64,000 nucleotides of DNA from Octopus bimaculoides. Taxonomy: Eukaryota. This document shows, in pieces, positions 43,627-45,600 of this stretch. A program made the position numbers and the translations under genes. The notes beneath the pieces were generated by a model. That model ran no database searches and was not told where the DNA came from. It saw only the letters and a program-made list of their open reading frames with translations. Where the stretch lies: contig NC_068982.1 in NCBI RefSeq assembly GCF_001194135.2, positions 171,504,118-171,568,117 on the forward strand. The letters are read 5' to 3'. Numbering within the stretch: the stretch's first letter is position 1; each line of letters opens with the position of its first letter.

Positions 43627-43810
43627 TATTTCTTTAGTGCCCAGAGGGGGCTAATCATGGAGGGGACAAACAAGACAGACAAATGGATTAAGTCGATTAC
43701 AACGACCTCAATGCGTAACTGGTACTTATTTAATCTACCCCAAAAGGATGAAAGGCAAAGTCGATCTCGGCGAAATCTGAACTCAGACCGTAACGGCAGA
43801 CGAAATACCG
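43627..43810 (-). mobile_element. SINE family A body and variant tail (3' part of the SINE interrupted at 43811-45545)
   Basis: Minus strand: CGGTATTTCGTCTGCCGTTACGGTCTGAGTTCAGATTTCGCC (B box)...AAGTACCAG...GTAATCGACTTAATCC...CACTAAAGAAAT. Confidence 0.9.
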
Positions 43811-45545
43811 ATTTCTTCCCTAGGCATAAAGCCCTAAATACGGATGTGCGGACACCACAAGGACAGACAAGACCACAGTGGGGACAAAAACATAAAATGG
43901 GATGAAATTATATAATAATGAAAAAAAATGAAAATGGCCACACGGTCCCCACTCACATGCGGTACCATTTGAACCATTATATGTACTATCTACAATTGTT
44001 CTTTTTCCTACCCTATCACCATTATTTTCCTAAAATAACATGATTTAAAATACTTTTTTTTTTCTCTTTTAGTAAAACTTCATCAGTGGTTCAATATCTC
44101 TCAGACTGACTACTGGTGGCAACTCCTTGAATTTCACCTCCACTCATTTTGGGTCAACGCTATCTCCACACATCTCTTTCAACTTTCTGCAGCTCTCTTC
44201 TTCAATCAGTTTTGCCTTCATATCCTCTGCGTAGACGTATGAAGGCACCTTCACTCTTACTATTGAATTAAGCTTAATTATCTTTTTTTCTGTTTCTACA
44301 TTCTTTGGGTATGTCACATAATACCACACTCCATCTCCTCCTTGTATCTTCTTTCTTTGATCTTGTACTTTTTGTTCTCTTTTTCCTTCCTCTATTCTAA
44401 ATAATCTCTCCAATTCTCCTTCCTACACTTGTATTTCCGAATCTTTCTCCAGCCGCTATCTTTACTGGTAGCTCCACTTTCTTTTTACTTTCCCTTTTTT
44501 CTTCCTTCTTACTGACCTCCTTCATAGTTTCTTTTCTCACCTCTTCTCTCTTCTTTTTCTGCTTCTCTGGCGGAGAACTCATTCCTCCGCTCCTCCTTCT
44601 TTTCTTTTTAACCATAGTAAATCCATTCTCTGTTTCTTTTTCTGTTACCATGACCTGATCTGCACTTTCCTGTCTCTCCACCTGTTCTCCTTGTTCTCTT
44701 TGGGTGCACCACGCCTTCAAGTAGCCCCTCTCTCCACATGTGAAACATATCGGCGGCCTTCCCTCTACACTGACTCTTAATCCTACATCTTCTAGCAGCA
44801 CAATCTCATCCACCACACTGTTCAAATTCTCCGTAGTTGCCTGTATTGTTAATTCAATACCGTATCCCCAATAGTTTACTTTCTGGATCCTGGTAGCCTT
44901 CAAATTCTTCCCATCCTTCGTATTGTATGTTATCGCTGTCATCAGCCATTCTTCTTTTAATTCGGGTGGCACCCTACCCACTCACACTTTGGCCACACGT
45001 TTGCCGCAGTACGAAGGCAGGAGCATCCATTCTTCTGACCTTATAACCTCTGTGGAGTGCTTTATTGCTTCCTCCTCTGTTGTGAAGCGCACCTCCACAG
45101 TGGCGTATTTTCTCCCTCTCGTAATGTATGTTGTAAATCTTTTCAACTCCTTGATACATTCCTCTATGGCTTCTATCGGCGCAATCTCTATTTTTCTTTT
45201 GGCTGTTTTCATGGTTTTAAATGTTACCATTCTTTTTAACACGTTGGCCGATAATTCTTCAGGTGGCGTTAGCTTCAGAATATTACCTTCCTTAGTGATT
45301 AATTTTTCACTTTCCTTCATCTTTCGAGGCTCCACATTTATCTCGTGGATTTCCAACTCTTGCATGTCTGCGCCTCTCCTCGTTGCGGCCGCATAACTTG
45401 GGCCTCCCTCCTATATCTTCTCCATTTTCCCCACAATGTGGAACAAAACAACAATTAACAAATTAACAACGGCAACAGTTCTAACAACAATTCAAATGAA
45501 ATAACAATGGCAACAATTTAATAATATTTCAACATAAACTCACAG
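43811..45545 (-). mobile_element. ORF1-only (HAL1-like) non-LTR retroelement of L1/Tx1 type, inserted in a SINE with a 13-bp TSD
   Basis: TSD AGACGAAATACCG (43798-43810) versus AGACAAATTACCG (45546-45558), 11/13 identical. About 120-bp 5' UTR, a single ORF1 and a ~260-bp 3' UTR ending AAGAAAT; no endonuclease or RT sequence is recognisable. Confidence 0.8.
44069..45425 (-). pseudogene. ORF1 (Gag-like nucleic-acid-binding protein with zinc knuckle), ~450 codons, lightly disrupted
   Basis: MEKI*EGGPSYAAATRRG start, ...RVAKV*VGRVPP..., knuckle CFTCGERGYLKAWC (CX2CX4[H>Y]X4C at 44706-44747), a basic/acidic stretch, one frameshift near 44400 and premature stops near 45411, 44982 and 44144. Confidence 0.85.
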
Positions 45546-45558
45546 AGACAAATTACCG

Positions 45559-45600
45559 CTAAGCATTTCGGTGTGCTAAAGATTCTGCCAGTTCCCTGCC
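45559..45600 (-). mobile_element. SINE family A head (5' part of the interrupted SINE)
   Basis: GGCAGGGAACTGGCAGAATCTTTAGCACACCGAAATGCTTAG matches the head at 23070-23110. Confidence 0.85.

What the first reader, a model, noticed from the sequence alone, without database searches (positions are those of the whole stretch)
43627..45600. ORF1-only L1/Tx1-type retroelement inserted in a SINE head and sharing that SINE's 3' tail: a possible LINE/half-LINE/SINE system that targets itself
Seen: a SINE head (45559-45600) and its body (43627-43810) are separated by a 1735-bp insert bounded by a 13-bp duplication (11/13) of the SINE sequence between its A and B boxes. The insert encodes only a zinc-knuckle ORF1 and has no ORF2. 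Its 3' end (TTGTCTGTCCTTGT..TGTCC...TAG...AAGAAAT) aligns with the variant tail of this SINE at 43627-43685 and 17838-17900, with a 14-bp exact core and the same AAGAAAT terminus. The standard-tailed copy at 22993 lacks this tail. Known: HAL1 elements are ORF1-only L1 derivatives, Tx1-clade LINEs are often sequence-specific, and SINEs borrow 3' tails from their partner LINE. Inferred: an unseen autonomous Tx1-like LINE mobilises both this half-element and the tail-variant SINE and integrates at CGGTATTTCGTCT in the SINE head, disrupting its Pol III promoter. I am not aware of this arrangement being described in cephalopods.
Basis: partly seen in the sequence, partly recalled or inferred. Interest (0 to 1): 0.82.

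Follow-up and report, generated by a model that had tools for sequence, protein, structure and literature searches.

The report
Half-LINE lodged in its partner SINE
An octopus jumping gene that kept only its RNA-binding gene and lost its copying enzyme sits inside a short repeat (SINE) that carries the same 3' end, and a very distant relative elsewhere in the genome sits at exactly the same 13-base site. Together they point to an L1/Tx1-like LINE family as the probable driver of the large octopus SINE expansion.

Summary
On the minus strand, a 1735-bp insert (45545..43811) splits a roughly 230-bp SINE between head and body. It is flanked by a 13-bp target duplication (11/13 identical).

The insert is a decayed ORF1-only non-LTR retroelement of about 450 codons, with three in-frame stops and one frameshift. 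It encodes tandem RRM-like domains, a CCHC-type knuckle and a conserved C-terminal domain. There is no ORF2.

Eight octopus loci fetched from chromosome assemblies support most of the interpretation:
- ORF1-only copies recur in several deeply diverged subfamilies. They form one clade, and the ORF is under purifying selection (dN/dS 0.2-0.3).
- Full LINEs with a homologous ORF1 plus an APE/RT/zf-RVT ORF2 exist in O. sinensis and O. vulgaris.
- LINEs, ORF1-only elements and both SINE tail variants share a 3' tail containing a hairpin kept by compensatory changes.
- A second ORF1-only copy, only about 34% identical in protein, sits at exactly the same SINE position with a 13-bp duplication.

Three points remain open. 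The site preference is not exclusive. The autonomous copies seen lie in microsatellites or tandem arrays, so the donor of the site-specific endonuclease is unseen. Tx1-clade membership was not tested by phylogeny.

This is a new variant of known kinds (HAL1-like half-LINE, TE-targeting Tx1-like LINE, LINE/SINE tail sharing).

The parts
45559..45600 (-). SINE head (SINE positions 1-43), 5' part of the interrupted SINE
   Evidence: Collinear with the intact SINE at L001 10447-10675; blastn match.
45546..45558 (-). 5' copy of the 13-bp target-site duplication, CGGTAATTTGTCT (SINE positions 44-56)
   Evidence: 11/13 identical to the 3' copy.
43811..45545 (-). ORF1-only ('half-LINE') non-LTR retroelement, 1735 bp, full length (5' end CTGTGAG, as in the L002 copy), decayed
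   Evidence: The only copy in the window.
45426..45545 (-). 5' UTR of the element (120 nt)
   Evidence: The start codon at 45425 matches the N-terminus of P0003 (MEKAPAGGQSYAAAT).
44069..45425 (-). Decayed ORF1 of about 450 codons. In-frame stops at 45413-45411, 44984-44982 and 44146-44144; frameshift near 44420-44400; true stop at 44071-44069.
   Evidence: The alignment with P0001-P0003 ends at the same ...PLMKFY*.
44748..45200 (-). Two tandem RRM-like RNA-binding domains
   Evidence: AlphaFold2 model of relative P0032: residues 30-230 have pLDDT above 85. Best Foldseek PDB matches are tandem-RRM proteins (IMP3, nucleolin, Sxl, HuR), probability 0.96-1.0. Mapped to the window through alignments A3/A4.
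44706..44747 (-). CCHC-type zinc knuckle, here CX2CX4YX4C (His replaced by Tyr)
   Evidence: Relatives P0001 and P0003 match Pfam zf-CCHC.
44072..44331 (-). Conserved C-terminal domain (GVWYYVTYPKNVETEKKI...ELPPVVSLRDIEPLMKFY) of unknown function
   Evidence: Conserved at the very end of all ORF1-only subfamilies. No Pfam match.
43811..44068 (-). 3' UTR. It aligns over almost its whole length with the 3' UTR of the L002 copy, and over its distal part with LINE 3' UTRs.
43811..43870 (-). Shared 3' tail: TTGTCTGTCCTTGT..TGTCC motif, hairpin and terminal AAGAAAT
43822..43834 (-). Tail hairpin: GGGC (43834-43831), loop TTTAT, GCCT (43825-43822)
   Evidence: Across 19 tails, 94.7% of cells are paired and two pairs switch CG to GC. 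Covariation is 0.66 against 0.29 for shuffles (0 of 500 shuffles reach it).
43798..43810 (-). 3' copy of the target-site duplication, CGGTATTTCGTCT
   Evidence: The same 13-mer follows the tail of the L002 copy.
43628..43797 (-). SINE body and variant tail (SINE_V; tail at about 43628-43685)
   Evidence: blastn 85% to the reference SINE, positions 46-227.
17837..17927 (-). Second SINE_V copy; its 3' part only, because an assembly gap cuts it off
22994..23108 (-). SINE_S ('standard tail') copy with an internal deletion. It carries the same class of terminal hairpin as the insert. TSD ACTGTTGAA[T/C]ATC.

Best explanation
The insert is an old, now dead copy of a non-autonomous 'half-LINE'. This is a lineage of octopod L1/Tx1-like non-LTR retrotransposons that kept ORF1 (two RRM-like domains, a CCHC knuckle and a C-terminal domain) and the 5' and 3' UTRs, but lost ORF2.

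Proposed mechanism:
1. The element's RNA is bound by its own ORF1 protein.
2. Its 3' end, a short hairpin followed by (A)AAGAAAT, is recognised by the endonuclease/reverse-transcriptase protein (ORF2p) of an autonomous family member acting in trans.
3. That protein copies the RNA into the genome by target-primed reverse transcription.
4. Here the bottom strand was nicked at 5'-...GAAATACCG^CTAAGC-3' in the head of a SINE, and the top strand 13 bases further on. This produced the 13-bp duplication.

The SINE carries the same kind of tail, so it is most likely mobilised by the same LINE family. At least two deeply diverged half-LINE subfamilies used this same SINE site. The site is therefore a preferred target of some endonuclease of the family, as is typical of Tx1-type LINEs, though it is not the only target.

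Shown directly:
- the anatomy of the element and the target duplication;
- the ORF1-only family structure, its single clade, and purifying selection on the ORF;
- autonomous relatives with an APE/RT/zf-RVT ORF2;
- the shared tail with compensatory changes in the hairpin;
- recurrence of the exact insertion site.

Inferred:
- trans-mobilisation by ORF2p;
- that an endonuclease determines the site;
- that the SINE copy is inactivated by the insertion.
For: **Anatomy and target duplication:**

**Family**
- 327 relatives at E<=1e-3.
- All those whose source was looked up are octopod: O. bimaculoides, O. sinensis, O. vulgaris and Argonauta hians.

**ORF1-only architecture**
- ORF, then about 250 nt of 3'UTR, then the tail, with no ORF2, in the window, L001, L002, L004-A/B and L008-b/c.
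- In an NJ tree, all verified ORF1-only copies form one clade (bootstrap 100), separate from the three verified LINE ORF1s.
- dN/dS is 0.29 [0.21-0.46] and 0.21 between L003 and L004-C, and 0.10 for the window against L003.

**Autonomous relatives**
- L005, L007 and L008-d have a homologous ORF1 followed by an ORF2 that starts M..L.IGCLNVRGLG. Pfam hits are Exo_endo_phos, RVT_1 and zf-RVT.
- An intact homologue, P0159, matches human L1 ORF2p at E 1e-72, against 6e-29 for R2.

**Tail**
- The tail is co-terminal and similar in 3 LINE, 5 half-LINE, 6 SINE_V and 5 SINE_S copies. The L002 half-LINE tail is 25/29 identical to the SINE_V tail.
- The hairpin is 94.7% paired and has CG-to-GC swaps at two pairs.

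**Site**
- The L002 copy, about 34% identical to the window ORF, is inserted at SINE positions 44-56 with its own 13-bp duplication and the same CTGTGA 5' end.

**Consistency with known Tx1 behaviour**
- LINE copies lie in (ATT)n (L005) and in (CT)n (L008-d).
- Kojima 2015 (PMC4494074) documents Tx1-clade targeting of microsatellites and of other transposons, and SINEs that share the target of their Tx1 partner.
Against: - Only two same-site insertions were seen. They are among about five ORF1-only copies whose 3' junction can be read, and the loci were chosen through the protein, not at random.
- The other copies abut or sit inside relatives (L004-A/B, L008-b/c) or lie in unrelated DNA (L001).
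- SINE copies with the same tail are dispersed and have variable duplications of 9-19 bp. If one ORF2p served all of these elements, they should share targets.
- No autonomous LINE was found in the SINE-head site.
- No autonomous copy from O. bimaculoides itself was retrieved.
- The tail hairpin is only 4 bp and is not thermodynamically exceptional (z about 0). Its two stem classes may reflect a single evolutionary switch.
- Profile comparison with the ZCCHC3-type ORF1 domains of the fish relatives was weak (probability 55%).
Confidence: 0.75

Rival explanations
1. The SINE head is a hot spot rather than a homing site. The family's endonuclease has only a loose preference (something like GTATTTC or GTTAT at the start of the duplication). 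The SINE head happens to contain that motif and is present in hundreds of thousands of copies, so repeated hits at the same base arise from abundance and not from a dedicated specificity.
For: - A SINE_V copy in unique DNA has the duplication GTATTTCTA, which resembles the SINE-head site GGTATTTCGTCT. Other duplications start GGTTAT, AGATAAC or ACTGTTGAATATC.
- Half-LINE copies also occur elsewhere.
- SINEs are the most abundant octopus repeats, at 11.6% of the O. vulgaris genome (PMC13282606).
Against: - Both insertions share the same first-nick position and the same 13-bp duplication length, to the base, and both lie in the same orientation as the SINE.
- The roughly ten intact SINE heads in the fetched loci show no SINE-into-SINE insertion at this site, although SINEs are far more numerous than half-LINEs.
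Confidence: 0.18
2. The composite is itself the mobile unit. Head, ORF-bearing middle and SINE body move together as one long element, or the arrangement was spread by duplication or gene conversion, so the two cases are not independent insertions.
For: - The composite in the window is flanked by a possible 9-bp repeat, TAATTTAAA.
- In L002, the SINE head that carries the element is preceded by a second, truncated SINE head. This suggests that head sequence can travel with the element.
Against: - The two ORFs are about 34% identical in protein, while both SINE parts are 84-89% identical to one reference SINE. The SINE parts are therefore far younger than the split between the two elements.
- Each case has its own 13-bp duplication of SINE sequence.
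- Other copies end with their own tail and have no SINE body behind it (L001, L004-A, L008-b).
Confidence: 0.03
3. The ORF1-like sequences are a host gene family derived from a LINE ORF1, as ZCCHC3 or L1TD1 are in vertebrates, and not mobile elements. The signal of purifying selection would then reflect a host function.
For: - dN/dS is well below 1.
- Many copies are annotated as proteins in octopus genomes.
Against: - Copies have target duplications, 5' truncations and a LINE-type 3' tail.
- They occur nested and in tandem.
- They are mostly broken by stops and frameshifts, and they differ in position between loci and species.
Confidence: 0.03

Closest known systems
HAL1 ('half-L1') elements of mammals (Bao and Jurka 2010, as cited in PMC4494074)
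   Same: A non-autonomous LINE derivative that keeps ORF1 and the termini, has lost ORF2, forms its own long-lived lineages and must borrow ORF2p in trans.
   Different: - HAL1 derives from mammalian L1. Its ORF1 has a coiled coil, an RRM and a CTD, and the element ends in poly(A).
- The octopus ORF1 has tandem RRM-like domains, a CCHC knuckle and a new C-terminal domain.
- The octopus 3' end is a specific hairpin tail, not poly(A).
- Two subfamilies of the octopus element share a precise target site.
Tx1-clade LINEs with target preference: Tx1L in Tx1D, Keno in U2 snRNA genes, Kibi/Koshi in (TC)n/(TTC)n, and crocodilian Tx1-Mar in Mariner-N4_AMi with its partner SINEU (Kojima 2015, PMC4494074; Kojima and Fujiwara 2004, cited there)
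   Same: - An L1-superfamily ORF2 (APE, RT and a C-terminal zinc motif) and an ORF1 with RNA-binding domains plus CCHC.
- Different sublineages have different targets, including microsatellites ((CT)n and (ATT)n here) and other transposons.
- Insertions are often next to or inside relatives.
   Different: - The transposon targeted here is a SINE that shares the element's own 3' tail, meaning a fellow dependant of the same LINE family. It is not an unrelated DNA transposon.
- The copies found in the target are ORF1-only elements.
- Clade membership was not tested by RT phylogeny.
Stringent LINE/SINE tail partnerships (for example eel UnaL2/UnaSINE1; Kajikawa and Okada 2002, cited in PMC4494074)
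   Same: The SINE and its LINE share a roughly 60-nt 3' tail with a short conserved stem-loop and a fixed terminal motif, which the RT presumably recognises.
   Different: - The tail is shared by three tiers: autonomous LINE, ORF1-only LINE and SINE.
- Two stem variants (GCCC..GGGT and GGC..GCC) are each found in both LINE-type elements and a SINE subfamily.
- The LINE is L1-like rather than L2-like.
'L1-Tx1' families in published octopus repeat annotations (PMC13282606, PMC8967140)
   Same: These are probably the same autonomous LINEs. O. vulgaris has 13 recently active L1-Tx1 families with 421 insertions covering 2.29 Mb, a mean of about 5.4 kb. The unit in L007 is about 5.28 kb.
   Different: Those papers give class-level counts only. 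The papers I could search do not describe a SINE partnership, ORF1-only derivatives or target sites.

Membership tests
Non-LTR retrotransposon (LINE-type, TPRT insertion) | Target-site duplication, defined 3' end, frequent 5' truncation, no LTRs or TIRs | tested here: met
   13-bp duplication in the window and in L002. Co-terminal tails. 5'-truncated copies in L001 and L008-a.
ORF1-only non-autonomous LINE (HAL1-like kind) | ORF1 present, ORF2 absent in all members, and a lineage of its own rather than sporadic deletions | tested here: met
   At least six copies from at least four subfamilies run ORF, about 250 nt of 3'UTR, then the tail. Single clade with bootstrap 100. dN/dS 0.2-0.3.
HAL1 family proper (mammalian L1 derivative) | ORF1 homologous to mammalian L1 ORF1p (coiled coil, RRM, CTD) and a poly(A) tail | tested here: not met
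   The ORF has tandem RRM-like domains plus CCHC. The element ends in hairpin + AAGAAAT, not poly(A).
L1 superfamily (L1/Tx1 group) for the autonomous relatives | ORF2 with an N-terminal APE endonuclease, RT, and a C-terminal zinc-binding motif | tested here: met
   Pfam Exo_endo_phos, RVT_1 and zf-RVT on the L005 ORF2. Homologue P0159 matches human L1 ORF2p at E 1e-72 against 6e-29 for R2.
Tx1 clade | RT domain groups with Tx1 reference elements in a phylogeny (for example RTclass1) | not testable with these tools
   No Tx1 reference sequences could be obtained. Indirect evidence only: published RepeatMasker-type annotation lists L1-Tx1 families of matching length in O. vulgaris.
Tx1 clade | ORF1 of the RNA-binding-domain plus CCHC type | tested here: met
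   AlphaFold2 and Foldseek indicate tandem RRMs. zf-CCHC hits in relatives. Fish relatives of the ORF2 carry RBD_ZCCHC3_1st/2nd plus zf-CCHC ORF1s, but direct profile homology to them is weak (probability 55%).
Tx1 clade | Target-sequence preference (repeats, small RNA genes, other TEs) | tested here: inconclusive
   Observed: two identical-site insertions in the SINE head, LINE copies in (ATT)n and (CT)n, tandem arrays. Numbers are small and other sites also occur.
LINE/SINE partnership through a common tail | 3' tails of SINE and LINE are homologous and co-terminal, with a conserved structure | tested here: met
   Alignment A5 of 19 tails and hairpin covariation. The L007 LINE tail TTGTCCCCTCTTTGTTGGCCCCTTGTGGGTAA compares with the SINE_V tail TTGTCCCCTCTATGTTTAGCCCCTTGTGGGTAG.
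LINE/SINE partnership through a common tail | The LINE's RT actually mobilises RNAs that carry the tail | not testable with these tools
   This needs a retrotransposition assay.
tRNA-derived SINE (SINE2) | Head recognisable as a tRNA, with A and B boxes | tested here: inconclusive
   ARAGORN and Rfam find no tRNA in an intact copy. Only a B-box-like motif, GAGTTCAAATTCC, and a weak A-box-like motif are visible by eye.

The most novel reading that the evidence does not exclude
Octopods harbour a three-tier retroelement community built around one L1/Tx1-like LINE family: autonomous LINEs, a diversified ORF1-only lineage kept functional by selection, and the massively expanded SINEs. All three share one hairpin tail. 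In this reading the ORF1-only tier homes specifically into the promoter-bearing head of the partner SINE. It would then act as a parasite of a fellow parasite, inactivating SINE copies while using them as an abundant, harmless landing pad.
Probability: 0.35. Interest if true: 0.75.

Novelty: new variant of a known kind. Interest (0 to 1): 0.62.

Why it matters
SINEs are the signature repeat of octopus genomes. They have been linked to genome reshuffling and to neural expression. The papers I could search do not say which LINE drives them; attention has gone to RTE and Dong elements.

The shared tail seen here, with its structure-preserving changes, points to an L1/Tx1-like family as the engine. 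That is directly testable in a retrotransposition assay.

The ORF1-only lineage shows that a 'half-LINE' way of life, known from mammalian HAL1, arose independently in a mollusc. Here it arose with a different ORF1 type and persisted under selection. This bears on what ORF1 proteins contribute in cis.

A precise, recurrent insertion site inside the partner SINE would add SINEs to the list of Tx1-type targets. It would also give a natural case of competition between two dependants of the same LINE.

Tried and rejected
- **Pfam on the window ORF and on P0032:** no hit.
- **Rfam on the whole window and on an intact SINE; ARAGORN on the SINE:** nothing.
- **Exact look-ups of the three closest UniRef proteins and of isoform X2 of LOC128247323:** not on record. 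Loci were reached through other family members instead.
- **Handing a repaired ORF to the representative search:** I used exact window pieces instead.
- **Full-text search for SINE and tail sequence strings in papers:** none found.
- **Metagenome scan for the tail|target junction:** four hits, all chance matches in bacterial-looking contigs L009-L012.
- **Thermodynamic test of the tail hairpin:** not significant, z about 0. The support for the hairpin comes from covariation, not from energy.
- **Profile comparison of ORF1 with the ZCCHC3-type RNA-binding domains of fish relatives:** probability 55%, covering little more than the knuckle. Inconclusive.
- **Microhomology between the tail and the target as the cause of site choice:** the priming strand ends ...GAAATACCG-3', which cannot pair with ...AAGAAAU-3'. 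Rejected.
- **Pol III read-through from the SINE head as the element's promoter:** unlikely, because the element contains long T runs and the insertion separates the A-box-like part from the B-box-like part.
- **A suspected GIY-YIG (Penelope-like) motif in the ORF at 16492-17022:** no Pfam support.
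Full report
**What is in the window**

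The window is AT-rich (31.7% GC) and has 20 assembly gaps. Every protein relative of the insert is from Octopus bimaculoides or other octopods. The feature lies on the minus strand.

Reading 5' to 3':
- a SINE head (45600..45559);
- the 13-mer CGGTAATTTGTCT (45558..45546);
- a 1735-bp insert (45545..43811) that starts CTGTGAGTTTATG and ends ...TTTAGGGCTTTATGCCTAGGGAAGAAAT;
- the 13-mer CGGTATTTCGTCT (43810..43798);
- the rest of the SINE, down to ...CTAAAGAAAT (43628).

If the insert and one 13-mer are removed, the SINE is collinear with an intact copy from O. sinensis (L001 10447-10675). Identity is 187-189 of 223 aligned bases, with no gain or loss at the junction. The duplicated 13 bases are SINE positions 44-56.

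**The insert**

The insert carries one long reading frame, now broken, and nothing else.
- Start ATG at 45425. The product begins MEKI*EGGPSYAAAT, matching the N-terminus of relative P0003.
- In-frame stops at 45413-45411, 44984-44982 and 44146-44144.
- One frameshift near 44420-44400.
- True stop at 44071-44069, after ...PLMKFY. This is where all intact relatives also end.
- After the ORF come 258 nt of 3' UTR.

Pfam finds nothing in the window ORF. Intact relatives match zf-CCHC. In the window copy the knuckle reads CX2CX4YX4C (44747..44706), with Tyr in place of His.

An AlphaFold2 model of relative P0032, built with a 107-sequence alignment, is confident over residues 30-230 (pLDDT above 85). 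Its best PDB matches are tandem-RRM proteins (IMP3 RRM12, nucleolin RBD12, Sxl, HuR) at Foldseek probability 0.96-1.0.

The protein is therefore an ORF1 of the 'RNA-binding domains plus zinc knuckle' type. It also has a Lys/Glu-rich linker and a conserved C-terminal domain of about 90 residues with no known relatives.

**A family, not a one-off**

A profile search of 1.84 billion representative proteins found 327 relatives. Every one whose source I looked up is octopod: O. bimaculoides, O. sinensis, O. vulgaris or Argonauta hians.

Through five of these proteins, one ORF2 homologue (P0158, L006) and two further family members, I fetched eight loci from public assemblies (L001-L008).

ORF1-only copies with the layout '5' UTR, ORF, about 250 nt of 3' UTR, tail' occur in:
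- L001;
- L002;
- L004, which holds three copies; the 3' ends of A and B are visible;
- L008, copies a, b and c.

These copies belong to subfamilies whose proteins are only 25-60% identical. In a neighbour-joining tree of the RRM-to-knuckle region, all verified ORF1-only copies form one clade (bootstrap 100), apart from the ORF1s of the three verified full LINEs.

Codon comparisons:
- Two copies of one subfamily (L003 and L004-C): dN/dS 0.29 (bootstrap interval 0.21-0.46) and 0.21.
- Window copy against L003: 0.10, with synonymous sites saturated.
- Two adjacent near-duplicates (L004-A and L004-B): 0.71, as expected for decay after duplication.

The ORF1-only state is therefore old, and the protein mattered for propagation.

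**The autonomous relatives**

- In L005 (O. sinensis), a homologous ORF1 (P0038) is followed by a decayed ORF2. It starts MANLRIGCLNVRGLGSPVKRPEV and has Pfam Exo_endo_phos, RVT_1 and zf-RVT.
- In L007 (O. vulgaris), at least three nearly identical full copies lie head to tail with a period of about 5.28 kb. Each has ORF1 (P0036) and an ORF2 that is intact apart from one frameshift.
- L008-d is another full copy.
- An intact ORF2 homologue (P0159, 43% identical) matches human L1 ORF2p at E 1e-72 across the endonuclease and RT. R2 proteins score 6e-29.
- Fish proteins related to the ORF2 carry ORF1 parts that Pfam calls RBD_ZCCHC3_1st/2nd plus zf-CCHC. Direct profile comparison of the octopus ORF1 with them is weak (probability 55%).

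The family belongs to the L1 superfamily. Assignment to the Tx1 clade fits the domain content and the target behaviour. It also fits published annotations that list 13 recently active 'L1-Tx1' families in O. vulgaris with a mean insertion length of about 5.4 kb (PMC13282606). I could not run a phylogeny against Tx1 references, so clade membership remains untested.

**The shared tail**

Within the window:
- The 14-mer TTGTCTGTCCTTGT occurs only in the insert tail and in the SINE tail at 17879-17892. Chance expectation is 0.02.
- The insert tail aligns end to end with that SINE tail.

On its own this is modest evidence. The other loci strengthen it:
- The half-LINE tail in L002 (GTGTAGCCCTTTATGGGTAATAAAGAAAT) is 25/29 identical to the SINE tail (GTTTAGCCCATTGTGGGCAATAAAGAAAT).
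- The full LINE of L007 ends TTGTCCCCTCTTTGTTGGCCCCTTGTGGGTAAATAAAATAAAA. The SINE ends TTGTCCCCTCTATGTTTAGCCCCTTGTGGGTAGTAAAGAAAT.
- The LINE of L005 has the same layout.

I aligned 19 tails: 3 LINE, 5 half-LINE, 6 'variant' SINE_V and 5 'standard' SINE_S.
- A 4-bp hairpin about 12 nt from the end is paired in 94.7% of cells.
- Two of its pairs switch between C-G and G-C in 8-9 sequences.
- Covariation is 0.66 against 0.29 for shuffles (0 of 500 reach it), and at most 0.25 when partners are slid.

The two stem classes cut across element types:
- GCCC..GGGT occurs in the L007 LINE, the L002 half-LINE and SINE_V.
- (A/G)GGC..GCCT occurs in the window half-LINE, L004-A, L008-b and SINE_S.

The window element's hairpin is in fact the SINE_S type, while its upstream motif is the SINE_V type.

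Two caveats apply. The hairpin is not thermodynamically unusual. The two stem classes may stem from a single switch.

**The target site**

The L002 copy comes from the chromosome-level O. bimaculoides assembly and belongs to the P0024 subfamily, about 34% identical to the window ORF. Its flanks read:

...GAAATGCTTCGT GGTATAACGGCT | CTGTGAATTATTGTG... and ...GGGTAATAAAGAAAT | CGGTATTTCGTCT GCCGTTACG...

This is the same SINE position, the same 13-bp duplication length, the same orientation and the same CTGTGA start as in the window.

The SINE parts of both composites are 84-89% identical to one reference SINE, while the two elements have diverged almost to saturation. These are therefore independent insertions into SINE copies, not inheritance of a composite.

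The site is not exclusive:
- L004-A ends directly against the 5' end of L004-B.
- L008-b sits in the 5' UTR of L008-c, with a tentative duplication of about 12 bp.
- L001 lies in unrelated DNA.

Full LINE copies sit in (ATT)n (L005), in (CT)n (L008-d), or in direct tandem (L007).

SINE copies with the same tail are dispersed. Their duplications are GTATTTCTA, GGTTATGATGTTTC, AGATAACAGTTACTTCATA and ACTGTTGAA[T/C]ATC.

This mix of microsatellite, transposon and self-adjacent targets that differ between sublineages matches what Kojima (2015, PMC4494074) describes for the Tx1 clade. In that work Tx1-Mar and its partner SINEU share a preference for a Mariner element.

One piece is missing. An element without an endonuclease cannot choose a site, and I did not find the autonomous lineage that has the SINE-head preference.

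**How it most likely works**

The half-LINE RNA is coated by its own ORF1 protein. The tail hairpin and the AAGAAAT end recruit ORF2p from an autonomous relative. ORF2p then nicks 5'-...GAAATACCG^CTAAGC-3' on the bottom strand of a SINE head, primes reverse transcription there, and cuts the top strand 13 bases downstream.

There is no complementarity between the primer end and the RNA end, so recognition would be by protein and tail, as in 'stringent' LINEs. SINE RNAs with the same tail would use the same enzyme.

The anatomy, the family structure, the tail and the recurrence of the site are shown. The trans-mobilisation and the role of the endonuclease are inferred.

The main rival is that the SINE head is merely the most abundant instance of a loosely preferred motif (GTATTTC-like). 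The identical nick positions and duplication length argue against this, but only a genome-wide census can decide.

**Novelty**

Each ingredient is already known: half-LINEs (HAL1), TE- and microsatellite-targeting Tx1-type LINEs, and LINE/SINE tail sharing.

I did not find the following in the searchable literature:
- a mollusc ORF1-only lineage with this ORF1 type;
- the identification of an L1/Tx1-like family as the tail donor of the major octopus SINEs;
- a precise recurrent insertion site inside the partner SINE.

Repbase reports could not be searched. I rate this a new variant of known kinds, of real interest to transposon biologists and to those studying octopus genome evolution. It rests on few copies.

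Noticed in passing
L004 9929-14600; L008 7300-10660; L007 4700-20000: Family members cluster head to tail in one orientation. The L004-A tail ends at 11242 and the L004-B 5' UTR starts at 11243. L008-b lies in the 5' UTR of L008-c. In O. vulgaris, at least three near-identical full LINEs are in direct tandem with a period of about 5.28 kb.
   Followed up: partly
L008 3090-3260 and 10655-10770: Two half-LINE tails are both cut after ...CCCCTCTATGTT and followed by the same sequence. In one case that sequence continues into an LTR-type element (called gene with RVP and RVT_1). Another transposon may prefer a site inside this tail.
   Followed up: no
L002 11112-11114 and 36123-36125; L002 35900-36850: Twice, a SINE_V tail (...AAAGAAAT) is followed directly by a SINE_S that starts at its position 12 (AAGAAACGTTAGC). 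This may be a V-S dimer family or a preferred site. Nearby, four SINEs lie in tandem with similar spacers of about 19 nt.
   Followed up: no
L002 9462-9540: A second SINE head ending GCTTAGTAGTATTGC lies 24 nt upstream of the SINE head that carries the half-LINE. This may be 5' transduction from a source copy that itself sat in a SINE head.
   Followed up: partly
Protein P0001 (UniRef A0A0L8G4Z0): A mosaic ORF1. Its C-terminal half is 76% identical to the window ORF, while its RRM half is only 39% identical and groups with LINE-type ORF1s. This suggests recombination or template switching between subfamilies.
   Followed up: partly
Proteins P0055 and P0011: P0055 is a Helitron protein (Helitron_like_N plus PIF1) that contains a fragment of this ORF1. 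P0011 is an RGS-domain gene model with an ORF1 fragment inside it.
   Followed up: no
window 22994-23108 (-): A SINE_S copy with an internal deletion that begins inside the 13-bp target (GCTTAGCGG|CGTCGATTTAATCGAC). It has its own 13-bp duplication, ACTGTTGAA[T/C]ATC.
   Followed up: partly
window 45649-45812 (+) and 47348-47412 (-): Old, degenerate SINE remnants next to the composite. The alignments to the reference SINE are weak.
   Followed up: partly
L001 10447-10675: An intact SINE_V is inserted into the ORF of a half-LINE, with a 14-bp duplication GGTTATGATGTTTC. This is the reverse nesting of the one in the window, and it fixes the SINE's 3' end at ...GTAAAGAAATA.
   Followed up: yes
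L001 11108-11510: A different, longer SINE (by eye it has a Deu-like core) is inserted in the half-LINE 3' UTR. Its middle contains a TGTCTGTGTTTGTCCCCC motif that resembles the tail motif.
   Followed up: no
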